A DNA stretch of 64,000 bases. Source: Ruditapes philippinarum. Its lineage: Eukaryota. Location: assembly GCF_026571515.1 (NCBI RefSeq), contig NW_026864466.1:1-64000 (forward strand), written 5' to 3'. Shown here piece after piece: positions 5,391 to 55,400 of this stretch. The notes beneath the pieces were generated by a model that worked only from the letters and a program-made list of their open reading frames with translations, did no database searches and was not told the origin of the DNA. The translations under genes were made by a program, and so were the position numbers. Each line of letters begins with the position of its first letter. Positions within the stretch are counted from its first letter, which is position 1.

Positions 5391-8300
5391 ATGGGATCGC
5401 GTTGTTGTCGTGAGAATAAAGATAAATTAGAGGTTGATGAGGGAGTAAGTCATAATAATGCAAAACGGCCGACCTCACCGTCAGAAGTTACAGTGGCTGA
5501 CAAAACACACGAAAGGTAAGGGAAAAAACTTGAAATACCTTTGAATTAGTTGATGATTACAGAAGTCTTAACAATAAATACTGGCTGAGTGGCTATGTAT
5601 GTTCACAAAAATTTTGCAAATGTCAAAAATGGACTTTTTGTGTGCAGAAAATTTTGCGAAAGTATGATTTCTTGAACTTAATACTGTTTTGGAATATCAT
5701 AAATTGGGCAGCTACATGTTAAGAATAGTTTAATACCTTTATTATTTATAACATTGTTTAAAATATATATTGCTTGTTTGATAAAGGACCTCAACGCACA
5801 TTTCTCCATCATACTTTAAAATATGGTTTGTTATATGAATAATATATTGTTTCATGTGATTTGTTAAGACCAAACTTACACAAACAAAGCAAGCGATGAG
5901 AAAAATTAATCCCAGTACTTAAACAATCAAACTTTATGCACTAAAGATGCTGTATGGAAACGTGTTTTCAAGAGATAAAAAAAAACGTTTGCCTTAAAAG
6001 AAATAAAATTTGCGCGATCACATATTTGCAAATAATTTCAATTCGCAACAATCGCAAATATTTCCACGTCGCAAAATAAACTACTAACACAGTAAGTTAA
6101 AATATTTATCTTAAATGGGGATAACAATACTAAATTGATTCGACTAATTTTGTCCCTATATCCTGAATAATACAAGAAATAAGTGAATCTTTGCGGAGTG
6201 CTTGTAATTTTTTCTTTATAAGTACATTACATTTAGGTTGTCAAAAATGTGTAACTTTTTTTTTTTTTGCGCGCGCTCCAACCGTTTTTTCTTTTTTCGG
6301 TTACCACCTTAAGCATTTAGAAATAAATAATGTTGAATTATGTTTGTTTTATTCCATACTAAAGATGTCTTTACAAAGAAAAGATGTACAAAAATGAAGT
6401 GAAAAAGCTAGAAAAACAACTGATGGACCTTGAAAAACTGACTATAGATAAAGATAAAGAGATTATTACACTAACAGAAAACCATAACCAACAGATGGAG
6501 GAGCACATTTTGAAGTAATGATATTTATTATCATTAGTTTATATGTTTAAGAAAATAGAATTATTAATGAAAATGTATGTATTGTAGTGTTATAAGGTTC
6601 TGGTAGAGTAGCATTTTGTCAACAGGATAAATCAGAGGAATGGCATAAATCTTGGTAATTTTTAATGTTGTAAACACAAACATCATAAGTTTATCACGCC
6701 ATTCGAATTAATGATTATTAAGAGTTTCCTCATTTTTGAAAAACAAATCCTTCTAATAGCAAAATTATTGTTCAGAAATATATCCATACTGGTCGGAAAC
6801 CATCAACCGGACACTTTTGGAACATTTTTCCGTACATATTTTATAATTTTTAACCTAGAGACCAAACAATTTGACACAGTTCAGCTAGGTTCTTCTCCTA
6901 ACTAACAAACTAATTTGTTTATTTCTGATTGTATTGACACTTGCATCTGAGGCTCGTAAAGGAGGGTATCAAAATTACCTAAATTGTCTACACTACAGTA
7001 CCATGTGTCCGGACAGATATGTACATGATGTGATTTAATTCAGATAAAAGCTTGGGTGTTATGATTTTTGATTTGTAACATGATATACAATATGTCAACA
7101 ACAAATGCTGAAGTTTTGGATATTCTATTATTCACTATGCAAATGATTATAGCTGGTATATGAGGTTAGGCATTGCTTTCTTGACCCCCGAATTTCAACG
7201 TCAACATTCTTGAAATAGACATTAAAATATTACCATTTACGGAGGTTGAAATAAATTTATTTACTTAATTTTTAAAGAAACATGCACTTATTGTTGATAA
7301 AAAAGTGACTGACAACCACAGAACAAAGTAAATACTAAATTAAGCATTTTCATGGCCGTCCGGGTTTGGTGGTTGTCCGGTTTTGGTGTTCCCAACCAGA
7401 AGTGGTAAATTAAGCTTACATTTTGCATACAGGTGACCTTTAAGACTTATAACTGTCCTATGTTGTCAATTTTACTGTTCTTTATAGTGCCCATTACCTA
7501 TGATCTACTTATAGGTCTACCTTTTCTAATGTTGAATTATGTTTGTTTTATTCCATATTTAAGATGTCTTTACAAAGAAAAGATGTACAAAAATGAAGAG
7601 AAAAGGCTAGAAAAACAACTGATGGACCTTGAGAAACTGACTATAGATAAAGATAAAGAGATTATTACACTAAAAGAAAACCATTATCAACAGATGGAGG
7701 AGCAAATTTTAAAGTAATGCTATCTATTATCATTAGTTTATATGTTTAAAAAAATAGAATAATTATTGAAAATGTATTTATTGTAGTGTTATAAGGTTCT
7801 GGTAGAGCAGCATTTTGTCAACAGGATAAATTAGAGAAATGGCATAAATCTTGGTAATTTTTAATGTTGTAAACACAAACATCATAAGTTTATCACGCCA
7901 TTCGAATTTATGATTATTAAGAGTTTCCTCATTTCTAAATTTTATTTACATTTTGCATACAGGTGACCTTTAAGATTTATAACTGTCCTATGTTGTCAAT
8001 TTTACTGTTCTTTATAGTGCCAATTACCCATGGTCTACTTTAACTGTTTCTTGCTTTTTTCAGACATGAATATGAACGCAATGCACTTGATAGAAACATT
8101 TCAAAGCAAAGAGAACAGAATCGAGAACTGAGGGAGGAAAATGATACGCTCTTGACAAGGTAAAATATTGTCAATGTTGATACACTCTTGAAAATATATA
8201 AATTAAAATATAATTATAATATTATTTTTTTCAATATCATTTGTGGAAAATCTTGCTTGCTTACTCATACTTGTTCAAAGGTTACGATTATATTAGTGTA

Positions 8301-11300
8301 TTAGTCTCACAATTGTGCAGATCACTAAGATCACGACCAATATACGAGATCCATATTTGGAGGTTACCTTAGTGTTAATTGACAAATTTAAGCCTTCTAT
8401 ATTTATGACGACAAATGTTTTAAGACATATATTTTAAGACATACCGCACGCTTAGTGTTCAACCCATTTACAGTTGGACACTACGCTTTCCTCTTTTAAT
8501 TACATCTGACGGACCAAGTGGGAGACTCTATGATGGACAGTTCTTAAAGCCCTTTGGGACTGAATTGCCTTAATGTTTGTCTTCTGTCTTGCTTCGTCGG
8601 GCCCTTGTAGGTGATTTTCTTTGTTGCTCTGTCTTCCTTTAGGACATCGAGTACCTTTGTTATGGTCATTGGGTTAACTTTTATATGTTTTTACATGATC
8701 ATTTTTGTGTTTTACTTATTTAACCTTTTGTAACCATAACAACTGTTAGAATTTCACTTGGGGGGGGGGGGCTGAGAGCGAGGTTTGGTGCACCATTAAC
8801 CGGTTGGTTTAAACTCCCCAGCAGTATTTATGCTGCTGACCGTTCCAAGGCGGCGCCCCTCTGTGTTCCTCAGATGTATGTCTATGTTGTTTCATACTGT
8901 TTTGGTGACACTTGTGTCCCTTGTTGTTTTCTCGTCTACGGTAAGTATCTTCCCCTTTGCCCCTAGTTTTTATTTATTTTATGTATCTCCTCCCTTCTCC
9001 TGATCTCCTGTCCCCTTCCCCTGTGCCCTTTGACTTTATGGGCCTATTTTCAATCATTTATTTGTTTTCTTTTAGTGCCTTATTAGTAACTAATTGTTTA
9101 TGGTTTTAGTGGTTAGCCTGCCCATGCCCTTGTGCCCTGTCCTGTTTTTGTTTTGGGGTCCTCCTGGGCTCCTTGCCACTGGCTCTTATTGCTGGGTCGG
9201 GTGAGGGTTGCTTCATTGAACGCCGCCTTTCCTTGTCGATCTTGTTTATCATATTTTGAACAAGTAACTGTACCAGAAACAAACAGACTTATTTCCTGGA
9301 ATATTTATGATGGTAACAAATGATTGAGTTCCCTAAGCATAACAATTGCAGGCCTCTGCAGAGTTACGATACTAAAATCTCCCAGACTGATACAAAGTCT
9401 AGCCCCAACAGATTGATAGTAATAAAAAATGACAACAAATGAAGTCTCAATTCTCATTAAAACTCAATCATTCAATCAAACCTTAACCAGGTGCCTTGCT
9501 TAAACTACAACAGTACTTATGTTTACCTGTTTATCAACGTGATTGTAATAGTTTACAATTTACTATAAGTAGGTGTTTAGAAAAGGGGAAAGAAAACAAT
9601 GAAAAACCAAAAAGGGCAATGTCTTTATGATATGTTTATATTTCTGCTGTATTTGCAGATTCAGTGATGTTGCCAGTGCTAAGCTTACCGACGGGAACCC
9701 TAATATTGCAGACTTGAGTGATAAAAACCGACCTACAAAATTAGCTGAACAATATTCAGAACTCTATGACAATGAATGGACTGACGCCTTTGGTGTATTA
9801 AAAGGTGGAAACTCGGAAGAAAATGCATGCCGTATTCTTTTACACATGTTTTGTGTAAGAATAAGAATTAATTTCATAACTTATAAAAGACAAAATAATA
9901 AAAAAATAAATAAAAATATTTCGGAAAAAATCTGATTTGCCACATACGTGTTTAATTCGATAAATAAAAATAAGATTGTAGAAATAATGAATGTTAATTT
10001 TACCATGAGTGTACAACAGCAATGAATATAAATATCATGTTTGTATTTTTATTTTCTAATTGTTTTGCAGGACATTTATATAGCTTGTATAAAAAAGGCC
10101 GGACAAGATTGTGATAATGTGACAGATGCCATCAAGACCTTTCTCGATGTATGTTTTTATGTGTACTGTTTATCGTATTTATGTTCTCGTCGCTTTTCTC
10201 TGCATTATTATAAAATCAAAAACATACACCCTAAAAAACTGGGAATCAAAATTGATATTGGTATCGTTTAATACGTAAGTGTTGTCATTCTAATTTAATT
10301 CATTTTTTTCTAATTTTCACTGTTCGTGTCATAATCCTAAAATATTAAAAAGGTAGACATATTTGGAATAGATAAGAATTTAAGTTATTACTTTCATTGC
10401 AATTATGTTATTGAGGATGAATATAATTTTTTCTTTTGAATGTTCACTATATAACGATATCAGAGCTGTCTATTTAAAATATACGTGGTTACATCACCAT
10501 TCCCACGATTTATTTTATACCCTTGTGTAATCAACAATAACAAATGAAGTAATATCTATTGCTAAATATTTATATCATGCAATGAATGTAAGAAAGGAAT
10601 AGCTAAATAAGCATTTCAAAATTCAATTCATTTCATCTAGTTACAAATGTAGTTGCAATTTATCACTCAATCACAGTACCGTTTGATTATATTTTGTAAT
10701 TTGTATTTTGAACCTGAGGTCTTTATTACCAGAAATAAACTGAAACTGAACTGAAACTAAATATATTTTTTAATCTTAAACTGTCCATGTTGACGATCTC
10801 TTTTGTAAATGTCATTTAAAGCAAAGTTTTATGTTATGTTAGAAACAGGTCGGTTATTATGATAAAATATAATGAATTCATGATCTTTATCATTAGGGGC
10901 AGCAACCACCAGTCGAGTTATTGAAACAACTGAAAGACAACAGAAAGAACAATACCGCAGGACAAAAAACTATTATTAAACAGGTATTGATATAAACCAA
11001 TGTCAGCATATTTTGATATATCATTCGGCAATTGGAAACAATGTGAAAATAAACTGGAAAACGTTTTATTTAAATTATTTTTTCGGTTAAGTGGATTGAT
11101 GTTAATGTACTCGTAATGCTAACTTAATACTAAATTATACTAAATTATAGGAAACAGCGCTTGCATTGCTAAAATGAATAGAGACGTATACTCATTTGTA
11201 GTTGTGACTGTATTCATAATATCATTTATTTCAGGAAATTAAAGGAAAAATAAAGTGTATTTTACCCGAAAAAGAACTCCGAAAGGACCAACATGTTAAA

Positions 11301-11597
11301 CGATTTTTTAAACAGTGGTATAGTTTTGTTGCGTTAGCAGTTCAGATTCCCAAACCCTCTTGTTGTGCAAATATGATCGGCTTGATGAACTGCATGATAG
11401 TACTTGTTACAAGCTTATACAAAACGCGTATTTACATAGCATACATAGTATGGCCAGTATTATACTTGCACGAAAATGGAAACATTTTAATGAAAGGCAT
11501 TGCTCAGTGTAAGGCTAAAAACAGCAAACACAGTAGTGTACATTCTCTAACATCAACAAAACCAAAAACAGGAATGAGTTACAACAATTTGATTTGA
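5391..11597 (+). CDS. MIEAP/SPATA18-like domain protein, paralogue A (~414 aa as assembled; last exon corrupted, either pseudogenising or sequence error)
   Basis: Predicted exons: 5391-5515, 6365-6514, 7564-7713, 8064-8159, 9659-9854, 10071-10148, 10897-10983, 11235-11597, all GT-AG and phase-compatible. N-terminus MGSRCCRENK; core DGNPNIADLSDKNRPTKLAEQYSELYDNEWTDAF; IVWPVLYLHENGNILMKGIAQ. The CWRMAVQDPP segment of B is garbled by small indels. Confidence 0.8.
6329..7935 (+). repeat. Local duplication of a ~400-bp segment containing the 150-nt coiled-coil exon of gene A (~6329-6735 and ~7528-7935)
   Basis: Near-identical exon and flanking intron sequence: EKMYKNEVKKLEKQLMDLEKL vs EKMYKNEEKRLEKQLMDLEKL. 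Confidence 0.92.
8431..9255 (+). mobile_element. 3' end of a non-LTR retroelement (possibly Penelope-like) in a gene A intron
   Basis: Degenerate ORF end ILRHTARLVFNPFTVGHYAFLF followed by the common molluscan tail motif 'ggtttaaactcccca...ctgaccgttccaaggcgg'. More GC-rich than its flanks and absent from the equivalent intron of B. The family call is from memory only. Confidence 0.5.
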
Positions 11598-13217: not shown

Positions 13218-13237
13218 TTGTGTGTGTGTTGGTGTGC

Positions 13238-13283: not shown

Positions 13284-13285
<2 letters not shown>

Positions 13286-16659: not shown

Positions 16660-17629
16660 CATAAGAATGTTGAAGTAAATCAGGAAATTGGCTGTCTGCC
16701 ACTTTCGTTAACATTCAAAAGCTTCTGTCCATTCGTGTGTAAAATTCTTGATAGTTCTCCCCAAGTCTTGTTGGACGGTTAATGTCACTTAACTCTTGGA
16801 TGTTTGCGTTTTTCGATGCGATGACTAATGTCACTTAACTCTTGGATGTTTGCGTTTTTCGATGACTGGCTAAGACTGAAAAGTAAAATACAACGTTAGG
16901 TAAAAAACACATTTTGTGTAAATAACAGAATTCAGACTTTTGTTACAGTCAACAATATAGGGACAACCATAAAGAAGCGTTTTGCTGCATTTCTTATGTA
17001 AATTTAATCCCTATTAAATTGAATCGAATAATGAAAAAATTAGGTGAAATATCTTCTGCGCTTTCTGTCCGCTTAATTAGAACTTTTGATGCTTGTGGGA
17101 AAAATGAATTCGGAAAACTTTGAAAAACCTAGATCTAAGTAATAAAGAATTTTAATTTGATAATATAATAAAACAATTCATGTATGAAGAGATCGGTGAA
17201 AATCTATGAGTCTATGGACCTAGCAAAAGCTCATACAATGATGTACAATTGTACAATACCTTGTGTTAGAATCATCTGTTTCTTCCCCGGTTCTTGAGAG
17301 TTGATCCCTTACCGTACTTTCAGCACGTTGTAGAAGTTTGATTTGATCATTCTGTTCTTTTATCGTTTGTTGCATTTGGCGTTTGTCATTTGTCATGTGT
17401 TTTCATCAACATCTCAAAAGTATGACTTGCTTTTTCAAATACATCTTCTCGATAATCCTTTAAGCCTTTTTGGTCTCTTCTGCACTCTGAATAAACTGTG
17501 TCGTGAAGAGCTTTATATCCTTCTGTATTGCTTTTCGGCATCATTTTGTAGTTCAACTACTTTGATTCGAAGACGTTGATTTTTCTTTTCTTAGCTGGCG
17601 ACTTCAGTCGCCTTGTACTTGATATTATC
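16660..17629 (-). pseudogene. Decayed inverted fifth MIEAP-like paralogue (coiled-coil exon + core exon)
   Basis: Minus-strand exon 16875-16660 follows a strong acceptor (tattttacttttcag) and reads LS..SKNANIQELSDINRPTRLGENYQEFY/EWTEAFE...NILM|gt, with a ~46-bp internal tandem duplication and frameshifts. The upstream exon 17629-17313 is coiled-coil-like with stops and ends NVLKVR in phase 2 at a gtaagg donor. Confidence 0.82.
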
Positions 17630-22355: not shown

Positions 22356-22360
22356 CTCTT

Positions 22361-26489: not shown

Positions 26490-29400
26490 ATGGGGTCGTG
26501 TTTTAGTCGTGTGAATAAAAACAAATTATTGGCTGATGAGGAAGTAAGTCATGATAATGCAAAACGGCCGACTTCACCGTCACAAGTCACAATGGCTGAC
26601 AAAACACACGAAAGGTAAGGACAAAAATTTGATTACCTTTGAATTAGTTAATAATTACAGAAGTCTAAACAGTAAATGCTGGATGAGTTGATATGTATGT
26701 TCACACAAATTTTGCGAATGTCAAAAATTGATTTTTTTTGCGTGCGGAAATATTTGCGAAAGTATGATATCTTGAACTTAATACTGTTTTAATATCATTA
26801 ATTGGGCAGCTACAGGTTAAGAATAGTTTAATACCTTTATTATTTATAACATTAATTGAAATATACATTCTAAGTATGATAAAGGACTTCTTTATCATAT
26901 TTTGAAACATTTTTTTTGTTATATGAATAAACTTTTATGTCATTAACACATATATTTTTTTCATTAAAACATTTGTGATTTGTTAAGACCAAACTTAAAC
27001 TAACAAGCAATGAGAAAAAATAATCTCAGTACCTGAACAATCAAACTTATTTACGAAAGATGCTGTATACGTATGAAAACGTGTTTTCAAGTGATAGAAA
27101 AAAGTTTGCCTTAAAAGAAATAAATTTTGCGCAATCACATATTTGCGAATAATTTCAATTCACAGCAATCGCAAATATTTCCACGTCGCAAAACCAACCA
27201 CTAACACATTAAGTTACGAAAATATTTATCTTAAATGGGGACAAAAATATTTAATTTATTCGACCCATTTTGTCCCTATATCCTGAATAATACAAGAAAT
27301 AAGTGAATCTTTGAGAAGTGCTTGCATTTTTGTCCCTATATATATATTACATTTAGGTTGTCACTCATGTGTTACTAATTTCTTTTTGCGCGATCTTACC
27401 GTCTTTTCCCTTTTCGGTTACTTTTCTGAAGTAACCATCGTAAGCATTTTGAAACAAATAGTCGTTTCATACATGTATTAATTGCGACAAAGGGCATCGA
27501 GACACATTTGTACAAAGAACAAAGAAACTGGGTCGTCCAATTTGTAGACTTGGCTGAAATATTGTTTATCATTATCGCCCTTTAAGAATACATGCAAAAG
27601 TAAATTTAAACAAAGTTCATTGGTTTTATTAAAGATTTACAATGTGTAAAAGCAAAATTATTTGTGAATTTCACATTTTGCAGGACAATACTATTAACTT
27701 AATGATTTACAAATGCAAATGATAATACATTTTTGTGTAACATGACTGTATCTCAAGATATCAATGACCTTGCTCTGTTGCATATCCGGTGATAGATAAG
27801 CCTACATTTTAAAGGATGGATGTTTTTCGATTTATTCCATAATCAAAATGTGTTTACAGAGAAAAGGCCTACAAAAATGAAGTGAAAAGCCTGGAAAAGC
27901 AACTGAAGGACCTTGGAACACAGAGACAGGAACAAGTTTTAAAGTAATGATATCTTTTTCCATTAGTTTATATGTTTAAGAAAATGAAAGAATTATTAAA
28001 AATGTATTGATTGTAGTGTAATAAGATTCCAAGAGATGCATTTTAGAATAAGGATATATTACAGAAATGGCATTAATCTTGGTTACTATTAATGTTGTTA
28101 ATACATGTATCATATTAAGTTCTTCACGCCATTCCGGTTTTTTTCACGCCAGATTTTACTTTGAATATTACAAAGTTCAAAAACATGCACACAACTGTTA
28201 AAAGTTTAAATTTGAAAGAATACTTTAATTCCTAAACATGCACCCCTTAAACCGAGTACGTGTCACTACCATGCTTTCGAAGGTCGACATTTTTACTTAC
28301 CTATGCCTTTACTTTGCTAGGAGGGGCACTTTCGGTCTTGCTTTAAAATCGCCATATCACTTCAAAAGCATCATTCTGGCTTTCAAGCGAACAACATTAT
28401 TTGTGTTTGGTCTAAATAACAAATTAAAGGCCTACTATTTTTTTTTGTTTATGACTCTCAATTTATGAATAAGGACATATTTGTTTTAATCTCTTTAATA
28501 ACTTGATAACACGATAAATTATTAACCTGAATTTAAAGAACACATGATGATTCATAAATGGAAACACGAGCGCGTGTTTGTTCACAATTGTAATTAGATT
28601 TCAGATCTGTATAATTTTTCGTAAATTTTAAAACAATTTCTTGGGAACGCAATCTAAATGGTAAAACCGTTGTTATCTTTTGTAACTGTATATTTGCAGA
28701 ATTAACTTTTCATACCATGACATATGCATAACCTTATACATCTTGTCTTGTGTTTAAAGAGAGTTTCTGCTGAAAGTGCATGAAGTTTTGCTTCTTAATT
28801 CTGTGGAATAATATGTTTTGTTATTTATTTATTTATTTATTTAAGACATGAAAATGAACGCAAGGCACTTGATAAAACGATTTCAAAGCAAAGAGAACAG
28901 ATTCGTGAACTGAAAGAGGAAAATGAAACGCTCTTGACGAGGTAAAATATATTGTGATCATTCTTTCAATCTAAACTACGGATAAATCTGCTTACTCACT
29001 AGTTCTCACTAGTTCTATCATCAGTAATCCAACGTTAGGGTTATATCATTTTATTGACAACAGAGTCAGGTCACCTATGTAATATCAATCTACGATATAT
29101 ATGTATTGTTCAGTTTGAATATAATTATATTTCATTGTAACAGTTATGTTTTCCGAAACTTTGTAATACTAGAAAGAAACTGGTTGCAAAATAAAAAAAC
29201 AACAATTTAACATTTTTTTCCCAAAAATTTTAGACTAATTACATAATCACCATTCCAATGTATCTCCTTTCTTGTTTATCACATTGACAGATTCGTAGTT
29301 TGCCTTAATATATAAGATCAGCCATTGAAATAATATTCGTTTGCTTTTAGTTTTTGATCGGATAATAATTATATTAGATGAAAAAACTTTTTGTACCAGT

Positions 29401-40147: not shown

Positions 40148-43100
40148 ATGGGCTCTTGTTGTTCTAAAACAGATAACGGTGATAGTAATGCTAACAATCC
40201 ATCTCCTACCAGCAAACACAACAATCGGGAAAATCATGGAAAGTCGGCAAAGAAATATGAACATGCACCACCCCAGGATGTACGGTAGGAAACAAAATCA
40301 TTCAGTCATTATTCAATTAAAATTTATAGTTTTGCATTTGATACAGAGGTAACTGGGGACTTATTAAATGAAATGTATCTCATTAAATGCTATAAGTAAA
40401 TTTCAAATGTTATAAAAGAAAAATAGAATGTCATAAATTTAAAACTAGAAGTTATTGTTTATGTTTAACTATAAATTGTACATAGAATATAACACCTGAT
40501 ATGTTAATGGTTTCCTTTTAATTGATAACATTATTTACTTATATGAATTTATTTACTTTAATAGGAGGAGTTCATCTATGCAATCATATATTTTTAGAAA
40601 TAACATTTAACTTAATTCATAGCCATTTACAAATACTTTTCTTAAGAAACATTTCATATTTTAAATATTTAACTTTGCAGTTAATTGTTCAATCTGATCA
40701 AAGATTGCCATAATAGTTTTATTTCAGCAAAGAGCTTTGAAAATTACAATCTTTAAAATGTAAGAGTTTAAGAAAACCCCTTAGCTTGAAGAAACCATAC
40801 AAGGAAAAGCTTTCACGCTTACAATAGCAGATCTGTTTAAAATTTGTCAAATCGAAGAACCTTGATAAGTAAGCTAACTTCAAAGACAGTTTTATTCTAA
40901 AAATTTAACATTTTTACTAAGAAAAGACTACAAAAAAACTTTTACTGTGTCTTTTAGTTTTATTTAAACATTTTTGACACAACCTTTCTCTTGTAACTTA
41001 ATATCTTATTTTAAATCGTATGAGCCCGAACGTAAATTAAACATTCAACTGGAAGTATGTGAATTAAATCTTTATTCACCACATGTATTACTATTTTAAT
41101 TTAGAGACCATGGACATGGAAAAAAGGACAACAAACCTTATCACCATCATTCCAGAGATATTCAAAGACATACAGATGAAAAGAACGTCATGGAAAATAA
41201 GTTAGAACTGTCATTTCTAAATACGATTTGTATCTCTTGTCAATCAAGCATAAATCTAGGCAGTCAATTGTACAATCTTATTACAGTTTGTCAGAATAGT
41301 TTTTATTTCATCACAGAACTTTGAAAATTACCATCTTAAAATTGTAAGATTTTAAAAAATGCCTTGAAGAAACCATACAAGGAACCGCTTTCGTGCTTAT
41401 AATAGCAGATAGGTTTAAAGTTTGTCTAATCAATGAAGCTTGATAACCCATGCAAACTTCAAGGACAGCTTTAAAATTGTCCTAAAAAACTCTCACAAAT
41501 ATGACGTTCACTGGGTTTTTAGTTTTATTTGAACATTTTTGACACGACCTTTCTCTTGCGTGATGATCTAATATCTAATTTTAAATACTATGAACCCGAG
41601 CTAGAATTAAAAATAAGAATCAAATCTTTATACAGCACTTGTACATGTATTACTTTTTCAATTCAGAGACCGTAGACATGGAAAAAGAAAAGAAGTAAAA
41701 AATAAACGCAGACAATCTAAGGACCATCTTTCCGGTGAAATTCAAAGGCTTACCAATGTACAGAACGACATGGAAAATCAGTTAGAATTGTTATTTGTTT
41801 TTTATAAAGTTTTAACCCATTGTTTATCAAGCATTAGCTACATTTATAACTGGCTTGGTATATTTTTAAGAATACAACTCTAATTTACTAGTAATTAATT
41901 TTATACACTGTAAAGTTTTTCTGTAAACTGACGCATTATAAGCATTGTTTGATGCCTTACAGATAAGAAGAGGACGCCAAGCCAAAAAACTCCGTCGGAC
42001 GGAACTTTATGTTGCATTGTATTCTACAAGAAATATATAGTCTATGAAATATATATTCATAATTTGATATTTAACGTTTACCATTGGTGTTTCAAATTTT
42101 CCAGTTCTTGCTTTTCAACATATTCGGATCAGAGACTCACTTTCAGTACAACCATCTTTTCGATATAATACATTTTCTCATTTCAACATAAAACATGTAG
42201 TAGAATATATAAGTATACACAATATTTATTACCATATTTACAGTCAGGTATCTAAAATAAGAAATATTTTTCTTTTCTTTCACAGTTACAAAAGGGAGCT
42301 ACAAGACAAAACAAGTGAAACAGCACAACTTCAAGAACGTCTGAAAAATATTCAACAGGATAACTATAGAAGAGAAAAAGAAAGGGAAGAGATGTAAGAC
42401 TTATTAAATTTTGTTTTTTATCTATTGTTGTTATTTAAAAGTACCTAGCTAAATGTAAGCCTTAAGTTTTTTTTGCAGTTACAAGAAGGAGTTACAAAGC
42501 AAATCAAATCAAATATCACAAATAAAAGAACAAATGAAAAATATTGAAAAAGACCAACATGAAAAGGAAAAAGAGCGGAGAAAGAGGTAAGAAAATAATG
42601 TTTTATATTTTCTATCTGATAAATATCTCCGCATCAAAATGTAACAGACATGTATTATGTTTTAGGATAAGATAGATGCTCATACAACAAAGAATAAAGA
42701 TAATGCTCCTTATCAAATTATAAGAATACCTTTAGTATCTATTTAGCATAAAAATAAATTTTACAGTTTTCTACGGTATTCCGTGAGGGTTAGCCCATCG
42801 TTCTGTTGCGATTTATCATCGTACTGTCGCCTTCTTTCAACGTTTTGTTCCAAGTAATTATTTCATAATGTACATGCTTAAGGCCGGATATAGTAAGATA
42901 GTGACAATACGTAAGGACGATGGTCACAACACGAGAGTACGATGGCAGTATGATGGTAACAGTACGACAATGCGAAGGTGACAGTATGATGGGGACTGTA
43001 CGATAGACATTAATTCAGTACAATAGACTATCATCGTTTTATGTCGTGCTTCTCCACCGTACTTTTGAACTGTCGTATTGTCACACTCGTACTATCGTGT

Positions 43101-46100
43101 TTACTCTTTTCGCAACTGTAGTTTCGTGATATCATGATCGTACTGCCTTATTGTCCATATTGTACTGTCGTGTTTCGCGCTATCTGTTCTAAAATATTGA
43201 TAACAATAGTGTGCATAATTAAATGAAAGCCGCTGTAAAATTATCACTATAATATAACTTACTGAAATCCATTTTGTTTTATACAGATATCAAATGACAC
43301 TTGATTCTTTAGAGGTTAAAAACGATTCTCTTCGGAACGAACTGGAAAGGACAAAACAAGAAAAGAACGATCTCCTTACAAGGTAACTAGCCGTTATAAT
43401 AGTAATATTATGTACTTCATCGAGAACATATAATTATTAAGAAGAATAGAAAACAGTGTCATCAGATGATATATCACATTGTGCAGGTGTTTTCTTACTT
43501 TTTTTACATTTATAATCCAAATATATTGTACCATAAGTAGTTTGAATTGGATAACAATCACATTTGTCGTTATAGAATTTGACAGTCACTGTAATGAAAT
43601 GATATATTAGATTAAAACAGCATAAGATATATAACGATGTTTGTTTCACTTACATAACTGCGTATTTAAAGATAATACAATGTTTGTATATACATCTAAG
43701 CTGTTTTCATAAAGACACTATATTTCTTACTGCACAGGTAATGAGAGACGTATAAACAAAGTACTGAATGCCAAATATTAAATCTAAAGTTAATATTCGT
43801 ATGTTTACATCAAGTTCTAAACGTCGGCAAGTCTTTTCGCATTGTAGCTATTATATTAGATTTTCAGATAAAGCAATTTAAGACAAACCAATCAAATCAG
43901 CCGTTACAGAGAATCATCCAACAAATAAAAACAACATCATCATTACAGTAAGACATGTGATTAAGTCAGCATCTAAAACGCTGATTTAAGTGTATAGTCT
44001 CTTCGGAACACTTCGGGACTTTTTTCATATTTTAGCGTTGATTCACGTTTATATAAAAATACAAGAGTGCCACCACTTAACCCATAATACCAAATAACAT
44101 GCAAGTACCTGTCTCCTAAAAGTTATAAACAAAAATTGATAAAATGCCAATATCGCGATAGTTGCCACTGATTGTCCTTTTTGAAAGTCACGAGAAGCCT
44201 ACCCCAACCGTTGTCGGTCAGATCCTTTTATTTAAGCGGTTTTTAAGAGCTGCTTTTAATCAAATTGTGAAAATTTGTAAGTAAATGTCACGGTTGTGTG
44301 AGTCTGTAAGAACAGTTTATACTTTAATTTTGATTTAATGAATTTCTTTAAGATTCAGCGCATTAGCGGCAAACAAATTGACCGACGGAAATGCAAATAT
44401 TGCCGACCTGAGCGATGAAAATCGACCAACCAAACTTTCTGAGAAATATTCAGAACTTTACGATAATCAATGGACAGATGCATTCACTTACCTTAGTTCG
44501 ATTAAGGAAAGGGGAGAGGAGGAACTTTGTTCTATACTAGTGAATGCATTTTGTGTAAGTATTGAATGTGTGGAGGGGTTAGTAGAGGAAGTGCATTTCA
44601 TTCTGACCTGTTTTTTATATATACAGTAGTTATGACTATACGTCATCATAGACGATTTAAAATATACAAGCGTACGAGGTGTAGCACTTTCTTGCCGGAT
44701 GGAGCTCTAGATTGCATTAAATATACTTATTTTTCCGGCAAAATGCCACCTAAAATCAGTTTGACTTCCTGTAAAATTTACAGTGAAGAACTGAATATAA
44801 GAATATATTTCATTGGTCAATTTAAAATTACAAAATGAAATCTGAGAATCTTATTGGCCATTATATATTAAAATGTTAAGACTAGTTCACACATAAAATG
44901 TAAAGGATAGTCATTTTACTTTACAGCTTAATTAGATATGCTAATTTTGTTTATAATAATCATACTTCCAAAAAACATTTTGCACTGCGTTTAGATTTCA
45001 ATATATTTTCCATCCGTTTCTTTGCCGTTGTCGTCCTAAAATGATTAACACTGGCCCGACTGAATATGACCAGGACTCACCTTCAGGGTCAAATGTTTGA
45101 ATTTTGCTTTACATTGAATTGTCTTTATACATGGTGACATTGACCTTGATCGCTTGATTTTCGATATAACTGTTTCGATATAACTAATTTTGTTATGTAG
45201 GAATTGGGTGTATTTAGACTTGAGCACAACTACTTAAAGAAAATTTTACAAGATCAAACTTAATGTGACATTGACAACAACTTATTTTGACATTGAAGTT
45301 CCATTTAGTGTAATATTACAGTTTCTTGCTATATTTGGCTATACATTGGCAATCAATAAATGCGTTGTCTTCATATACACTTGAATGTGCAAAATAATTC
45401 CTGTGACAAAACAGTAAAGAAGATTCAATTGAACTTGACCTTGACATAAACCCTAAAGGTCAAAGTAGTAAATTTCGGCCGTCACCTTGTTATTAAATTG
45501 TATGTATAGATTTAATTTATACTTAGAAAATAGACCACTTATGACATAACTGACATGCAATTCATTAAAAATGACGTTGACCTATACATGACATTGACTG
45601 CCAAGATCAAATTTTGAATTTAGTTAGAACAACCATTATTGATTTTTAACTTGAACAAAATGACCCATATATTGAATAATTTAAATATGACCTTGAGCTA
45701 TATTTGACTAAGGCCGTCAATGTGACATAATTGCAATTTGCTTAATTTGTTATAAGTTTGATGTTTATTTACTAATTTGATTCATAATTTGACCAAACAG
45801 CATAGTTTAGAAATCAAAGATGCTGAATATCCCTGATAATACCTTGACCTATAATTAACATTGGCCGCAGGGGTCAGATATTTGAATTTGTTAAGTTGTC
45901 AAATATTTTGTTATTTATTTAGAGATTTGCTTTATATTTGGACAATAGAACCCATATGACAAAACGAATTAGTTGAATTATTCTGATATGTTTTTAACCT
46001 TTAACTGACATTTGCCGACAAGGTCTTATTACTGGAATGTGCTTAAATTGACTTTTGGTATTTCTTTTTTGGCTTGATTCATTCTTAGACAAAAATATAT

Positions 46101-48291
46101 AATTATAACAAAACTTACATTCTAGGTAATTCAAATGTTTTCGTTACCTTTGAATTGAATACTCTTGATGATTAAGGTCAAATGTGTAAATATAAGATTT
46201 GAATTCCATTATAATTTTTCAAAATTAAATTATTATGTATTCATTAAGTACTCTTTCCTACAATCTCCCTCTAATGTGTTTGACTTTTTGAGAATAAGAA
46301 AAAGTGGAACGTAGCCTCCGCTAGGCAGTATTTTTCTAAACAATTACATAAAATGTATGTCATTATGATAATGAATATCTTCTCGATTTTAATAGTTTAT
46401 GATTTGTTTTCATTTATATTTGCAGGTAATATATTTAACATGTAGAAAGAAAGCTGATGCTGACTTAAAAGCTTTTATCTCTGCTATTGATGAACTATAT
46501 GAGGTAATCTTATTCATTAGTAAAAACTCGTATATAAGTGTAATTTTGTTTTGATTCCACTTTAACTGCTGGAGTAGACCTCAGGTTCCCTTTGCATATT
46601 ATTTATAAGGCACAAACGGGCACCTGAATAGAACCACCTACGTTCCGTTAACTAGTTCGATAGCATTTTCATTTGACAAAAATCGAAAACCCTGGCGACA
46701 TTAACTACTCGGTCACGGATGCCCCATATGCCATGTACTATTTAGTATTTACACGCTATCATTAGTATTTATACATTGAGTTTTCATAGAACATTGTCAG
46801 AAAGAATATAAATTTTATAAATACATTATTATAATATTGTTATTAGTGTTTCATCAAAATATAGATACAGAGGAGTTGTAATGCATATGATAGGGGTGAA
46901 TATAGTTTTAATAACATGTTCTTATTAATCACGTTATATCAATGATTTTGCCTCCAGTCCGCCGACCTTGCAAGAGAAATGATCAAGACTGCAAAAGATA
47001 GAAGGAAAAAAAGACCCAGAATGAAGGTTGGAGAAATCAAACAGGTAAGTCAAATTCTAGAAATCAGATAAATATTCTACATTTATCTTTATATATTTTT
47101 TTTAGAGAATCGTATAATATGATATATAAAAAGAATCATCTTGATTTCAAGTAAGTAAAATATTGTGATATTCAAATGCCTAAAATATCTGTCATATAAA
47201 TAAATTGTCATTGAATTACATAGCTAGCAACGTGATAAAATACAAGTAATGTAACACTTATTCTAAATAATGACGGTATGTGCCTTTAAACACGTTTTTA
47301 AGATACTGATTTGGTGAATTGATGATTGATTGAATTAATGTTTGCATTCCATTTCTAGTTATACACTTCTGAAATGCAACAAGTTATACCTTCCGAAGAA
47401 CAGAAAGGAATCGAATCATTCCTTGATAAAAGCATCGAACTGTGCTGGCTGATGGCAATTCAAGACCCCCCATTATATGTAGACACAAATTTGTCACTAA
47501 GGGGCAAACCTTTCGAAACAAATTTGTTTAAACCGTATACGGTACAGGGCAAATATGTTGACTTTATAGTCTGGCCTGCATTGTATCTTCATGAAGGAGG
47601 GAGCTTATTGAATAAAGGAGTTGCTCAAGGAAAGAAACAGAAACATGAAACGCAAAGCCAGCTCTTTGATTATGTAGAAAATCTTCGAAGCCAAGTGAAC
47701 CGCTTATCTCTTACACCCAAGTCCTCATCAAAACCAGATACAAAATACACCAATTACACTGTAAATGAAAGAGTTGCAACAAAATATTTACAACCAGAAT
47801 CAGATACAAACGGGATACATACAGAAACATCCGCTGGAAATGCTGCATCTATTATTAAACCTGCAAAAGGTGAACCTAAAAATGAAAAATCTGCTTCAGA
47901 TAATACCAACCCTGCATCAGATTCAACCAAAAAATTAACAGAGGCATCCGCTGAATCTGTTTTACAAAGAATGGAAACGAGTACATCTTCTGAAACTCAT
48001 GCGCCCAAATCAAAACAAACAGGAATGTCCGCTAGAAGGGTTTCATCATTCACCAATATCAAATCAAATGCTGTTCAAGAAAAACAAGATTCTGAAAGTT
48101 CAACAATGTCATCACAGAAATTAATGGCAAAAAGTAATTATGAATCTGGTAGAAAATCAAGCTCATTCTCAACAGATGATAAATCGGACAGAATGAAATT
48201 ATCGGAATGGCAATCTCACCAACAATCAGGAAGTAAACAACAACCGGCTGGAAAATATAAATCAGTAACTGTTAATAATTCAAAGATGTAA
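40148..48291 (+). CDS. MIEAP/SPATA18-like domain protein, paralogue C (~652 aa, intact)
   Basis: Exons 40148-40284, 41105-41200, 41667-41780, 42286-42393, 42479-42586, 43287-43382, 44353-44554, 46426-46503, 46958-47044, 47359-48291 join in frame (1959 nt). N-terminus MGSCCSK; core NANIADLSDENRPTKLSEKYSELYDNQWTDAF; CWLMAIQDPP...IVWPALYLHEGGSLLNKGVAQ. A probable 5'UTR intron runs 39429-40064 (cag|gtaaga ... tttacag). Confidence 0.88.
40710..41835 (+). repeat. Tandem duplication (~585-bp unit) containing exons 2 and 3 of gene C
   Basis: Intron sequence 'ctttgaaaattac..ccttgaagaaaccatacaagga' and exon start 'ag|agacc...catggaaaaa' both recur; both exons end MEN.|gttaga. Confidence 0.85.
45000..46335. 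repeat. Degenerate satellite-like/HINE-type intronic repeat (TGACCTT / AAGGTCA motifs)
   Basis: Recurrent 'tgacattgacc', 'tgaccttga' and 'aaggtcaaa' motifs; ends near the small hairpin 'tagcctccgctaggc'. Confidence 0.45.
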
Positions 48292-51075: not shown

Positions 51076-52158
51076 TACTGTAACCCAATTTATATTCGCG
51101 AATACAAATTTTCGCGTTTTGCCGAGGTCGGACATATTCGCGAATATTAATTTCCGCGTTTTCTTGATTTCCGAAAAAAAATATTCGCGGATTGGAAAGT
51201 CCGATGGGGGCGTAAAATCCATTAGCCGACTATTAATCTTCAATAATTGAGGTCATTATTGGTGTCTTAAATGAAATTAACAATACGCTAGCCTTATATT
51301 GTATTGGTACACAATTCAGCAAAACATTTTCTCTATATATGTACATGTACGCATCGTTCGTCTTCATTTCTAAACATGTCGTTAAAAGGGTGGTTGATAA
51401 AAAATAAACCCTCAGAATGCACTCAGTTTGACGGGTAAAAATCGATACTAGTATGAAACCATCTTGTATTTCACTGTTTGTACACCCAATTCCCTTTTGT
51501 GATGCTCGATAGGTTTATACCACCTTTGTCTTAACAATTCACTCAAACAATTATTTTATAGGATCCAAAAAACAATAGCCTTTTGTGATGCTCGATAGGT
51601 TTATACCACATTTGTCTTAACAATTCACTCAAACAATTATTTTATAGGATCCAAAAAACAATAGCCTTTTGTGATGCTCGATAGTTTTCCCACTTTTGTC
51701 AAACGATTTGTATGCATATACTTAGTATAGAAGTGTAAATATGAAGAAACTTAAAACTGACACATGCTCCGTATAGTACCCTATACGGAACGTGATTGAC
51801 AATAGGCCTACTAATACGTATTTCATAAACTGTATTCAAATGTGGATGTTTATTTTGATTGCTATATTGACATAGAGTTCTTTTGATATTGATAAAATAG
51901 TAGCAGTTCACTTAGTTAGTGTTTTTATTGCTTTATGGCAATATTCATAACAATTCATTACTTCCTAACAGGTGCCCGTGAAATTCGAATATATCCGGTC
52001 AAATATCTTTGCATGAACAACGTCTAAAATAAAAATTTCTCTCCAATTTATTCGCGAAATCGTGCGGACTTATTCGCGCAAACAAATATTTGCGCTTCGT
52101 GGCCATCCGCGAATAAAGCGAATATTAATTGGTCGCGAATATTCGTTGGGTTACAGTA
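51076..52158. mobile_element. TA-flanked MITE with TCGCG-rich subterminal repeats, just upstream of gene D
   Basis: TIR TACTGTAACCCAA...TTGGGTTACAGTA with many ATTCGCG / CGCGAAT motifs near both ends; an internal ~2.4 x 86-bp tandem repeat at 51493-51700. Confidence 0.82.
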
Positions 52159-52492
52159 ATTGATTTCATGAAATTGTTTCCCTTTATCAGGTAAATGAAT
52201 ATAATTTGAGTCTTAACCTAAATGTATAATTTAGCGACGGGTTGTTTACGTTAAAAGCCTTGTCGGTCGAATGATTAATTATCTTCCGGGTTGGTTGGGT
52301 ATTTTGTAATTTATGCTTTCATATATCGATATTGGAATATGTCACATGTAAATAGTAGATTGTGTACGGATAAAAACACAGTGGATAGAAAAAATTGCCG
52401 TTCAATTTCGATTTTGATTTGACTAGTGTAGAAACTTATGTTATTCGTTTTATTTCATTTTCGATTTAGACATATAAATTTAAAACGAGGCT

Positions 52493-55400
52493 ATGTCAGA
52501 CTGTTGTTGCTGTTCTGGCACCAGGGAGGAAACTATGCGTTTAGATCCAACGGGCCGACATAATGGAAACCAACCAGTGACAACACAGCCACAGTCCACA
52601 CAGAAGTATACAAATGGGACTCATAATTTGTAAATATATATGTGTTTTTTTCCCTATTATTTTCCTGTATTCCATATATAGTGAAAAGGTTTTGAAGCTG
52701 TTAATGGCTTTTATATACTAACATGCTTTCATATTATTATCGTCATACGTGAACTTCCCTTTAAAAATGTTGTTTTTATTTTGTTTGATTGTGCAAAATT
52801 ACACGCATGCGCATCACGCTTTATCGGCATTGAATTGAGAACCTTTCAATACGCTCACCTTGCTATGTCATTTATGAAAGAAACAGATTTTCTACCGATT
52901 CGGCCGAATTATCAACTTGTATCATTGAGAACACTTGATTTATTTACCAATAAATATTGCTATATATGATTCACTTAATTGTTTAAACTATTTATAGTTG
53001 TATAGTTATATCCTAAAGAGGGCGTATGTCAGTCTGCCTCGCAAGTTTTCAGATCTGCCCTTAATTTGGCTGTTCATAGCAGTCCTCATAAGGGATAAAT
53101 TATTACCCGATCTTAAACTTCAAACATTCAAGTAAAGTAAAAAACAAATAAGAAACAGATATCAAAGATTGGCGTTGCATATTTACAATTTGTTTACTTT
53201 AAAATACTTTGTGGTCTAGCGTTTTCATAAAATTTTCATTGTGCCTATGATACATAAACATTTATTTTTATTTTAGGTGTACCATGCCTGACAATGAAGC
53301 AAATAAAAACGCGCTGATCTCGAAGGAAAGAGAACTAAAAGATCTTCAAGCAAGGCTTCAGAAGTATGTGTATGCTAATTTATTATAATAAATGTGCAGA
53401 ATCGGTATAAAATAACTGCATATTCAACTTGATTACAAGTTTAAAGCATGTACGTAACTATGTTACACAATAGTCACTGTTCAAGCTATTTAATGCAATT
53501 TTGTTAGAATTAAGCTCGGTAAAATACAAAAAAAATGTATTTTATATAATTATGTTAGAAATAAATAATCACAGAGTATTAAATTTGTGGGCACTTTCTG
53601 TTTGTTTTGAAACTACATGTTTCTGATCTTGAACCAAACGCACATAGACTTATGCTGATTATTATTTTAACAATTTAATATTATTAATGGATGCCGATAT
53701 ATTAACTTCATGCTTTAAATGTATGTAGGTTACAAACGCTCAAAGATAAGAGAGGTAACATACCATCAAACTGCTATGGGATATCGTTGTTAAAAGTTAA
53801 GATATCATTTTAACGAATATTTTTGTCATGTTTTATTTCAATACCCAGACGTATAAGGTTATATATAGATACACAACTTTTTTGTTAAATGAAACGTTTG
53901 CACGCAACGCTGAGTGTAAACGATATAACAAGCATATGGGGTTAATATGCAAAATGAGACTAACATTAGTGTATATTTGTTTTTTTATGTTTTAAAAAGC
54001 TTAATTTGTTATTATTAATATGTACATAAAAGAGTAAGTACATAACAAAATAAGTAAATCACTTAAAATGAGTCATTTAATATATTTAATATTTAATATG
54101 CATACTGTAAACCGCACCTTTTAAAAAATCAAAATAGCAACAGCAAAAGCAAAAATCTGCCGAAATAATTTGAGTGGTTTAGTCTTTAACAATCCGATCT
54201 CATATTTCATCTGGAAACAAATGAATTTTAAAATCCACGGAATGATATTTAACTTCATTATACACCAATATATCATTCAATGTCAAACTCCCATAGGCCT
54301 ATTATATGCTCTGATTGAATATCTAGGATATATTCTCCGGAGAATATTTCTTATATCAACCAGGGGCACATAACCCTTACATAACTCTATATTGAGCAGA
54401 AGGGTATAAATCATTCTTGTACTGTTTTTGTAATGTTTATTGGTTTGAGCAAAATTACATTGTAAAAATGATGATGTGTATTGTATTTATTTCTTGACTG
54501 CGTATTTTATAAATGTTTTAGTTGTAGGTCTTTCGGTACAATAAAATAAATAACGCATGGCTGTCGGGGTGATAATTGATATTGCCTCGGGGTAATATAC
54601 CAGTTCTCGGGTCGACTATAACCTCTGTCATTCCGACAGCCAAATGTTATTTCTATAATGTTATCCCTGTGTTATCAATATATTATTTCTTATTGGCTGT
54701 GTGCGAAATATTACCAATATATGAACTCTCCCACTCTCTTTTATCGATAATTTATATATTATCTTTTACTGTAGATACTTATCTCTTTATCATCAATATA
54801 TTACTTTTTACCTGTGTTTAAATACATAATTATGTCTGTGGTATCGATATACTGGTATGATTTGACCTTGTTTCATCGATGTATGAAATATGATATATTT
54901 GCCACGCAGTCTCATTTCAAGACTTATATTGCATGGCCACGTGCTACAAAGCAGTAGACAATATTAATAGAATTATAATATTTGTATTTAATTATGTTAG
55001 TTAATACAAAGGTGTATCTGTTTCAAGAGATCAAGAGGAAATTGACAGGCTCAAACAGAAAGTAAAAGATCTTGAAACGAAAAGTAATGAACTTCTTTCG
55101 AGGTAAGAGGCTTTATTTAATGATGATTCTGTATTAAAATCGAAAAACAATTTATTGAAGAATTATCATACAATAATGATTCGAGATCACCCACCGACAG
55201 CCAAGTGTTATTTCTATAATAGTTTTCCTGTGTTATCAATATATAACTTCTTATTGGCTGTGTGCGAAATGTTACCTATATATGAACTCTCTCACTCTCT
55301 GTTATCGATATACATATATATATATTCTTGTACTGTAGATACTTGTCTCTTGTATATCAATATATTAATTTTTACCTGTGTTTAAATACATGATTTCTGT

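What the first reader, a model, noticed from the sequence alone, without database searches (positions are those of the whole stretch)
5391..52629. Every paralogue starts with an SH4-like acylation motif, each a different variant
Seen: first coding exons missed by the ORF track begin MGSRCCR (5391), MGSCFSR (26490), MGSCCSK (40148) and MSDCCCCSG (52493). The rest of exon 1 cannot be aligned between A/B, C and D, yet exon length (125, 125, 137, 137 nt) and phase 2 are kept. Established: MGxxxS is the N-myristoylation consensus, and neighbouring Cys residues are typical S-palmitoylation sites. Inference: membrane anchoring is the selected trait. D has replaced Gly2 with a four-Cys string, and even the young A/B pair differ in Cys number, which suggests tuning of membrane or compartment targeting.
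Basis: partly seen in the sequence, partly recalled or inferred. Interest (0 to 1): 0.8.

Follow-up and report, generated by a model that had tools for sequence, protein, structure and literature searches.

The report
Lipid-anchor start motifs on clam Mieap-like genes
Four neighbouring Manila-clam genes of the hugely expanded "mitochondria-eating protein" family really do begin with short fatty-acid attachment signals (MG..C or a Cys string); this is a conserved trait of a whole bivalve subfamily, so these proteins are probably tethered to membranes, which has not been described for this family.

Summary
The window is Ruditapes philippinarum. It holds four tandem + strand genes, each with a coiled coil and a MIEAP domain (PF16026). 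RefSeq proteins for A (LOC132725706), B (LOC132725705) and C (LOC132725704) map exactly onto the window and start at the reported ATGs: MGSRCCR, MGSCFSR and MGSCCSK. I found no database protein for D (MSDCCCC). Its exon 1 is nevertheless an RNA-covered island at the same depth as its other exons, is in frame with them, and aligns to Mercenaria orthologues that start MSGCCC or MSNNCCESCC.

The motif is a family trait. Of 243 distinct N-termini, 56 start MG, with an NMT-like profile (Asn/Ser3, Ser/Thr/Cys6, Lys/Arg7). Cys is about 7-fold enriched at residues 3-8. All four genes fall in one subfamily that is mostly MG+Cys. Exon 1 encodes a roughly 40-residue disordered tether ahead of the coiled coil.

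D's loss of Gly2 predates the Ruditapes-Mercenaria split. The A/B difference is not evidence of tuning, because A's MIEAP core is scrambled by five indels and exon 1 pN/pS is about 0.8. Acylation itself is inferred, not shown. This is a predicted new lipid-anchored variant of a known expanded family, of moderate interest.

The parts
5391..5515 (+). Gene A (LOC132725706), exon 1: MGSRCCRENK..., 125 nt, phase 2 out
   Evidence: Sequence. RefSeq protein P0156 maps at 100% identity from this ATG.
6365..11597 (+). Gene A, remaining exons: 6365-6514, 7564-7713 (a tandem duplicated 150-nt cassette), 8064-8159, 9659-9854, 10071-10148, 10897-10983, and 11235-11594 plus the stop. The last exon has five indels relative to B, which scramble the MIEAP core.
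   Evidence: Pfam gives 25.5 bits against a cut-off of 27, covering profile positions 1-81 only.
26490..26614 (+). Gene B (LOC132725705), exon 1: MGSCFSRVNK..., 125 nt, phase 2 out
   Evidence: Sequence. RefSeq protein P0178 (497 aa) maps exactly.
27860..32072 (+). Gene B, exons 2-7: 27860-27943, 28846-28941, 29523-29718, 29849-29926, 30889-30975, and 31245-32069 plus the stop. The MIEAP domain is intact.
   Evidence: PF16026 scores 69.2 bits over profile positions 1-193. In the AF2 model residues 1-40 are disordered, 41-112 form a helix and 127-317 are globular.
40148..40284 (+). Gene C (LOC132725704), exon 1: MGSCCSKTDN..., 137 nt, phase 2 out
   Evidence: Sequence. RefSeq protein P0032 (652 aa, XP_060566867-9) maps exactly.
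41105..48291 (+). Gene C, exons 2-10: five phase 2-2 cassette exons (41105-41200, 41667-41780, 42286-42393, 42479-42586, 43287-43382), then 44353-44554, 46426-46503, 46958-47044, and 47359-48288 plus the stop.
   Evidence: PF16026 scores 60.4 bits.
52493..52629 (+). Gene D, exon 1: MSDCCCCSGT..., 137 nt, phase 2 out. No Gly2; four consecutive Cys.
   Evidence: Sequence. An RNA contig covers 52448-52607 at depth 120, against 0-9 in the introns and 100-200 in D's other exons. The peptide aligns to Mercenaria P0168 (z 8.8) and P0183 (z 6.8). The joint from exon 1 to exon 2 was not seen.
53277..58679 (+). Gene D, exons 2-8: 53277-53363 (new here), 55028-55102 and 55597-55692 (a duplicated cassette; a joint that skips the first copy was also seen), 56061-56268, 56797-56877, 57654-57740, and 58173-58679 including the stop.
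   Evidence: GT..AG joints 53363>55028, 53363>55597, 55100>55595, 55690>56059, 56268>56797 and 56876>57653 in runs X1/X2. Frame check. The last exon scores 49.4 bits against PF16026.
16739..16897 (-). Inverted relic of a fifth family member: a single MIEAP-like exon fragment with an internal stop. No acyl-type start was found for it.
   Evidence: tblastn. No minus-strand MG+Cys or CC start in the window.

Best explanation
The window holds four tandem paralogues of a bivalve subfamily of Mieap-like proteins. Their layout is an N-terminal lipidation signal, a roughly 40-residue disordered tether, a coiled-coil stalk built from phase 2-2 cassette exons, a globular MIEAP domain, and a disordered tail.

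In A, B and C the initiator Met would be removed and Gly2 N-myristoylated co-translationally by NMT. The adjacent Cys (positions 4-6) would then be S-palmitoylated by membrane DHHC enzymes, turning weak myristoyl binding into stable anchoring on the cytosolic face of a membrane. This works like the SH4 region of Lck/Fyn or the N-terminus of G-alpha-i. D and its Mercenaria orthologues have lost Gly2 and would rely on a multiply palmitoylated Cys string, as GAP-43 does.

Shown: the start codons and exon structures, transcription of D's exon 1, conservation of the motif while its surroundings diverge, and family-wide NMT-consensus and Cys enrichment. Inferred: that acylation takes place, that it gives membrane binding, and which membrane is the target. 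A is probably a decaying copy, so its variant carries no functional message.
For: The start codons and splice models of A, B and C are identical to RefSeq proteins.

For D, an exon-1 RNA island has the same depth as the other exons, the intron joints for the rest of the gene are seen, and the frame is continuous.

A, B and C fit PROSITE PS00008 (G-{EDRKHPFYW}-x(2)-[STAGCN]-{P}) (sequence).

Across the family there are 56 distinct MG starts among 243 N-termini. Position 3 is Asn in 21 and Ser in 9. Position 6 is Ser/Thr/Cys in 39 of 56. Position 7 is Lys/Arg in 20 of 56. Cys frequency at residues 3-8 is 10.4% against 1.5% elsewhere. MG against non-MG with a Cys at 3-8 gives an odds ratio of 4.8, p = 9e-6.

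On the tree, all four genes lie in one group of 26 rows (SH-aLRT 88) with 15 MG+Cys and 4 Cys-string members; label clustering was matched by 0 of 500 shuffles.

The motif is kept between orthologues whose remaining exon-1 sequence cannot be aligned (C against Mercenaria), and D's Cys string is kept between genera.

AF2 puts residues 1-40 as disordered before a 72-residue helix. There is no signal peptide or hydrophobic segment in exon 1 (sequence). An NMT gene is present in the genome.
Against: There is no experimental acylation or localisation data for any member, and no acylation predictor was available here. 21 of the 56 MG starts do not fit PS00008. Many family members, some of them perhaps truncated gene models, lack the motif. 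D's exon 1 to exon 2 junction was not observed directly, and exon 2 holds an internal ATG in good context (MPDNEANK). Human Mieap is reported to act inside mitochondria as a condensate that binds cardiolipin (PMC10845071), and that topology does not obviously fit an anchor on the cytosolic leaflet.
Confidence: 0.65

Rival explanations
1. The signals are real lipidation sites, but their role is organelle addressing rather than general or plasma-membrane anchoring. The target would be mitochondria or another endomembrane, in keeping with the family's link to mitochondria. Different acyl patterns (myristoyl only, myristoyl plus 1-3 Cys, Cys string) would send paralogues to different membranes.
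For: N-myristoylation is needed for the mitochondrial targeting of human SAMM50, TOMM40, MIC19 and MIC25 (PMC6235283) and of NDUFB7 (PMC10752898). Human Mieap binds cardiolipin through its C-terminal structured half (PMC10845071). A separate, well-supported clade (SH-aLRT 100) carries mostly MG-only starts (6 of 7) such as MGNNKSK and MGNNQSE.
Against: Dual myristoyl and palmitoyl signals classically give plasma-membrane or Golgi localisation, as for Fyn and Lck (PMC2132482, PMC2185081). Nothing here tests localisation. Cys number varies even between orthologues (C has 2, Mercenaria P0040 has 1), which may be neutral.
Confidence: 0.2
2. Gly2 and the Cys cluster are conserved for a reason other than lipidation. 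Examples are metal or redox chemistry of the Cys run, disulfide-linked oligomerisation at the head of the coiled coil, or N-terminal stability rules.
For: Cys runs of 3-4 residues (D; Mercenaria CCESCC; Mya MGSSCCC) could bind metals. No acylation data exist.
Against: The co-occurrence of Gly2 with Asn/Ser3, Ser/Thr/Cys6 and Lys/Arg7 is the specific NMT recognition profile. Metal or redox use would not explain it. Cytosolic proteins rarely hold disulfides. The Cys enrichment is tied to MG starts (odds ratio 4.8).
Confidence: 0.1
3. For D only: exon 1 is a 5' untranslated or alternative exon, and translation starts at the internal ATG of exon 2 (53277-53363, MPDNEANK...). In that case D has no Cys-string N-terminus.
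For: The 52629>53277 joint was not seen among the laid contigs. No database protein for D was found in two searches. Exon 2 has ACCATGC, a good start context.
Against: The exon-1 ATG is the first ATG in the transcribed block (the contig starts at 52448). It opens a frame that runs unbroken through exon 2. The encoded peptide, not just the DNA, is conserved with the start of Mercenaria RefSeq proteins (z 8.8), including the Cys run and the QKY.(T/N)G motif. RNA depth on exon 1 (120) matches the other exons.
Confidence: 0.07

Closest known systems
SH4 region of Src-family kinases (Lck MGCxCS, Fyn MGCxxC) and the G-alpha-i/o N-termini: myristoyl-Gly2 plus palmitoyl-Cys
   Same: Met-Gly start, a small residue at position 3, Cys within residues 3-6, Ser/Cys at 6 and Lys/Arg at 7, followed by a disordered segment. 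The predicted two-signal membrane anchoring is the same (established knowledge; PMC2132482, PMC2185081).
   Different: There is no homology and no kinase or G-protein domains. The cargo here is a coiled coil plus a MIEAP domain. The resemblance is convergent and at motif level only. Acylation has not been tested.
GAP-43 / PSD-95-type N-terminal palmitoylation without myristate
   Same: D and the Mercenaria MSGCCC and MSNNCCESCC proteins have an N-terminal Cys cluster and no Gly2.
   Different: GAP-43 has hydrophobic and basic neighbours that give the first membrane contact. D has Asp3 and a hydrophilic context. The resemblance is recalled from general knowledge, not tested here.
Mieap / SPATA18 (PF16026), the p53-induced mitochondrial quality-control protein
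   Same: The same C-terminal MIEAP domain (B 69 bits, C 60 bits), a preceding coiled coil and flanking disorder. The bivalve expansion of this family is published (OG24, about 53 genes per bivalve genome; PMC8382680).
   Different: These are members of a lineage-specific expansion (at least 143 domain-exon matches in this genome), not orthologues. They carry an N-terminal acylation signal on a dedicated first exon. A full-text search found no paper that links Mieap with myristoylation.

Membership tests
MIEAP domain family (Pfam PF16026) | HMM match above the gathering score (27 bits) over most of the 195-position profile | tested here: met
   B scores 69.2 bits (profile 1-193) and C 60.4 bits (1-193). 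D's last exon alone scores 49.4 bits. A fails with 25.5 bits over profile 1-81 only, and its last exon gives no match.
N-myristoyltransferase substrates | Gly at position 2 after the initiator Met | tested here: met
   A, B and C meet it. D does not: it has Ser2.
N-myristoyltransferase substrates | Sequence context G-{EDRKHPFYW}-x(2)-[STAGCN]-{P} (PROSITE PS00008), with Ser/Thr/Cys at 6 and a basic residue at 7 preferred | tested here: met
   A is GSRCCR, B is GSCFSR and C is GSCCSK, and all three fit. The family profile agrees.
N-myristoyltransferase substrates | Myristate attached in vivo | not testable with these tools
   This needs metabolic labelling or mass spectrometry.
Dual-acylated (SH4-type) membrane anchors | Palmitoylatable Cys within a few residues of the myristoyl-Gly | tested here: met
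   A has Cys5 and Cys6, B has Cys4, and C has Cys4 and Cys5. Cys is about 7-fold enriched at residues 3-8 of MG starts.
SH4 domain in the strict sense (Src-family kinases) | N-terminus of a unique-SH3-SH2-kinase protein | tested here: not met
   The only Pfam domain is MIEAP. 'SH4-like' is therefore an analogy, not membership.
Palmitoyl-only N-terminal Cys-cluster anchors (GAP-43 type) | N-terminal Cys cluster without Gly2 | tested here: met
   D is MSDCCCC. The Mercenaria orthologues are MSGCCC and MSNNCCESCC. The flanking basic or hydrophobic residues typical of GAP-43 are absent.
Mieap/SPATA18 orthologue | One-to-one orthology with vertebrate SPATA18 | not tested
   The genes belong to a bivalve expansion with at least 143 domain-exon matches in this genome (PMC8382680), so orthology is unlikely.

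The most novel reading that the evidence does not exclude
Within the bivalve-specific radiation of more than 100 Mieap-like genes, a whole subfamily has become lipid-anchored. Its N-terminal 'acyl code' (myristoyl only, myristoyl plus one to three palmitoyl-Cys, or a Gly-less Cys string) diversifies under selection, so that otherwise similar coiled-coil/MIEAP paralogues go to different membranes. That would make it a combinatorial lipid address system inside a stress/immune gene expansion.
Probability: 0.2. Interest if true: 0.7.

Novelty: new variant of a known kind. Interest (0 to 1): 0.45.

Why it matters
Mieap-like genes are among the largest bivalve-specific expansions, at about 53 per genome in PMC8382680 and at least 143 domain exons in this genome. 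Their function is unknown beyond analogy with human Mieap, which is a soluble protein that forms condensates inside mitochondria. If a large subfamily is instead lipid-anchored to the cytosolic face of membranes through a dedicated first exon, the working model for these genes changes: they become membrane-tethered coiled-coil scaffolds. It also gives a cheap, direct experimental handle, namely N-terminal peptide-GFP fusions with G2A and Cys-to-Ser mutants and click-chemistry labelling. The finding is a prediction from sequence. Three of the four genes are already annotated (A, B, C); no database protein was found for D.

Tried and rejected
1. Chance ORFs or wrong starts: rejected for A, B and C by exact RefSeq mapping, and made unlikely for D by RNA coverage and orthologue conservation.

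2. A database protein for D: two word-index searches, with A's protein and with the Mercenaria D-orthologue, found none in the 186-724 aa range. This does not prove D is unannotated.

The Logan contig ends at 52607, 22 nt before the donor.

5. Fold of the MIEAP domain. The full B model has mean pLDDT 73, and the domain-only model has pLDDT 92.6. Neither gave a convincing PDB match. Foldseek gave E of 0.1 or more, with GrpE chains on top at probability 0.54 or less. VIA-align gave Z of 6.2 or less, with GrpE at Z 5.5 over 100-109 residues. This leaves only a weak lead.

6. Rfam on D's repeat-rich introns: no match.

7. 'Tuning' between A and B: rejected as unsupported.

8. I searched exon by exon and used natural database proteins (P0005, P0156, P0168) as full-length queries. 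In the tree, D is represented by its last exon only.
Full report
**What is in the window**

The window is AT-rich animal DNA. Pfam scans of the long + strand ORFs show four tandem genes with a MIEAP domain (PF16026), plus a C1q-domain ORF upstream. Exact look-ups identify the species as Ruditapes philippinarum. Proteins P0156 (XP_060566872.1, LOC132725706), P0178 (LOC132725705) and P0032 (XP_060566867-9, LOC132725704) come from one 91,954-nt contig. They map onto the window at 100% identity through canonical AG/GT sites. Gene A has 8 exons, B has 7 and C has 10.

**Checking the observation**

The four reported starts are exactly as described:
- A: 5391-5515, MGSRCCR
- B: 26490-26614, MGSCFSR
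- C: 40148-40284, MGSCCSK
- D: 52493-52629, MSDCCCCSG

The exon lengths are 125, 125, 137 and 137 nt. Each exon has a GT donor and ends in phase 2. Each ATG is the first in-frame ATG after an in-frame stop 12-27 nt upstream, with a purine at -3.

For A, B and C these are the RefSeq start codons. The exons are therefore not unannotated; they are simply too short for an ORF track.

A scan of both strands of the window looked for ATG-Gly starts with a Cys at residues 3-7 and at least 40 open codons. It finds only these three, against 0.68 expected per random window at any position.

**Gene D**

Two protein searches found no database protein for D. I built its model from RNA instead. Twenty Logan runs of the same organism hold about the exonic share of the stretch.

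I laid two of them, plus two raw RNA-seq runs, on 51900-57899. This gave GT..AG joints 53363>55028, 53363>55597, 55100>55595, 55690>56059, 56268>56797 and 56876>57653. The joints reveal an exon I had missed (53277-53363). They also include a joint that skips the first copy of a duplicated cassette exon.

Exon 1 is covered by a contig at 52448-52607 with depth 120. D's other exons have depth 100-200 and its introns 0-9. The transcribed island fits the predicted exon plus a 5' UTR of about 45 nt. The joint 52629>53277 itself was not among the reported joints. The frame opened at 52493 runs unbroken through all eight exons, giving 425 codons.

Independent support comes from Mercenaria mercenaria. 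LOC123559061 (P0168/P0034) starts MSGCCCSD...QKYITGKHE and aligns to D's exon-1 peptide with z 8.8. P0183 and P0181 start MSNNCCESCC, and P0183 aligns with z 6.8. In the tree, D's last exon groups with these Mercenaria proteins (SH-aLRT 89).

**The motif is a subfamily trait**

An HMMER search over 1.8 billion cluster representatives found 1,735 family clusters at E of 0.001 or better. Every named hit I looked up was from a bivalve: Veneridae, Mya, Mactra, Dreissena, Unionida, Solemya, oysters, scallops and mussels.

Among 243 distinct N-termini of the proteins collected, 56 start MG. Their profile is the NMT recognition profile:
- Position 3 is Asn in 21 and Ser in 9.
- Position 6 is Ser/Thr/Cys in 39 of 56.
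- Position 7 is Lys/Arg in 20 of 56.

Cys makes up 10.4% of residues 3-8, against 1.5% in the rest of these proteins. It is linked to MG starts, with odds ratio 4.8 and p = 9e-6.

On a maximum-likelihood tree of 69 members:
- All four window genes fall in one group of 26 rows (SH-aLRT 88). It holds 15 MG+Cys and 4 Cys-string proteins. The few others start inside the domain or coiled coil and look like truncated models.
- A, B and a third Ruditapes copy (P0179, MGSRCC, intact domain) form one clade (SH-aLRT 100).
- C groups with Mercenaria MGNDCTGS proteins (SH-aLRT 97).
- The Cys-string type lies among mostly MG+Cys lineages at a polytomy, so the branching order is unresolved. The simplest reading is an old loss of Gly2 before the Ruditapes-Mercenaria split.
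- A separate clade (SH-aLRT 100) carries mostly myristoylation-only starts (6 of 7 rows) such as MGNNKSK and MGNNQSE.

Between C and its Mercenaria orthologues only the MG..C motif survives in exon 1. This is the signature of selection on the motif alone.

**Architecture**

An AlphaFold2 model of B, built with 129 aligned sequences, shows four parts:
- Residues 1-40 are disordered (pLDDT below 50). These are exactly the residues encoded by exon 1.
- Residues 41-112 form one long helix.
- Residues 127-317 form a confident globular domain (pLDDT above 90).
- The tail is disordered.

The exons between exon 1 and the first domain exon are all phase 2-2 cassettes. B has 2, A has 3 including a tandem duplicate, C has 5, and D has 3 including a duplicate. 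The conserved phase 2 of exon 1 is therefore forced by the exons that follow it.

A domain-only model (pLDDT 92.6) has no convincing PDB counterpart. The only hits that cover both its helical and its beta part are GrpE chains, and they are weak: Foldseek E 0.1 to 0.85, VIA Z 5.5.

**Mechanism**

Established knowledge gives the following steps. NMT myristoylates Gly2 co-translationally once the initiator Met is removed. Myristate alone binds membranes weakly. Palmitoylation of nearby Cys by membrane DHHC enzymes locks the protein onto the membrane, as shown for Fyn and Lck (PMC2132482, PMC2185081).

A, B and C have every sequence feature this requires, and the genome encodes NMT. D would be a palmitoyl-only Cys-string anchor.

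I therefore read these proteins as lipid-tethered coiled-coil stalks that present a MIEAP domain. Which membrane they bind is open. Myristoylation also directs some human proteins to mitochondria (PMC6235283, PMC10752898), and human Mieap binds cardiolipin through its structured C-terminal half (PMC10845071).

None of the acylation steps is shown here.

A is a decaying copy. Relative to B, its last exon has five indels (+1, -4, -1, -1, -1) within about 130 nt. These destroy the CW.M..QDPP and YKPYTKSG motifs. The Pfam match drops to 25.5 bits over profile positions 1-81, and the last exon gives no match. A is also absent from the genome-wide PF16026 hits that include B, C and D.

Between A and B, exon 1 has pN/pS of about 0.8, against 0.31-0.54 in the other exons. 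Its nucleotide identity (87%) equals that of the intron next to it (89%). The A/B difference in Cys number therefore cannot be read as tuning.

The intact paralogue P0179 has MGSRCC, so B's MGSCFS is the derived state. It arose by three adjacent non-synonymous changes that still keep one Cys and create the canonical Ser6. This is suggestive, but it is a single case.

**Novelty**

The bivalve expansion of Mieap genes is published (PMC8382680), and genes A, B and C are annotated as 'uncharacterized protein'. A full-text search found no paper that combines Mieap with myristoylation. The scan's own notes hold nothing on it.

The finding is a well-supported sequence prediction of a lipid-anchored subfamily. 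It is a new variant of a known family that uses a well-known kind of signal.

**Limits**

- Read laying allowed a single call.

Noticed in passing
window 11235-11597 (+): The last exon of gene A (RefSeq LOC132725706, annotated as protein-coding) differs from B by five indels that scramble the conserved MIEAP core, although the frame stays open. It is probably a pseudogene or a truncated-domain copy.
   Followed up: yes
window 52493-58679 (+): Gene D (8 exons, 425 codons) is supported by RNA joints, but two searches found no database protein for it. There is a previously unseen exon at 53277-53363. The duplicated cassette exons 55028-55102 and 55597-55692 are joined in series; a joint that skips the first (53363>55597) was also seen.
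   Followed up: yes
window 56954-57097 and 51900-52158: Two short elements inside or next to gene D have very high RNA depth (up to about 31,000 in X1, and thousands of raw reads in X21). Many different flanks and opposite-strand joints are attached to them. They look like abundant dispersed repeats (SINE- or MITE-like). Rfam gives no match.
   Followed up: partly
window 6365-6514 and 7564-7713; 55028-55102 and 55597-55692; C 41105-43382: All coiled-coil exons are symmetric phase 2-2 cassettes whose number varies (2, 3, 5 and 3). Recent tandem exon duplications are present in A and D, so stalk length evolves by exon duplication.
   Followed up: partly
window 2280-2681 (+): An ORF with a C1q domain (PF00386, E = 2e-13) lies upstream of gene A. 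It belongs to another family that is expanded in bivalves.
   Followed up: no
window 16739-16897 (-): An inverted relic of a fifth MIEAP-like gene. Only one exon-like fragment (NANIQELSDINRPTRLGENYQEFY) is detectable, with a stop upstream of it, and no acyl-type first exon was found.
   Followed up: partly
models m942faaa63f44 and m6cbbd6bf28f0 (proteins P0178, P0097): The MIEAP domain folds confidently (pLDDT 92.6) as four long helices plus a small beta unit, and it has no clear PDB counterpart. The only hits spanning both parts are GrpE nucleotide-exchange factors, and they are weak (Z 5.5; Foldseek probability 0.54 or less).
   Followed up: partly
G000, whole genome: There are at least 143 PF16026 exon matches in the 1.4-Gb assembly, many in tandem arrays on single contigs such as C12669, C10372, C5923 and C756. 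A sister clade of the family carries myristoylation-only starts (MGNxxS).
   Followed up: partly
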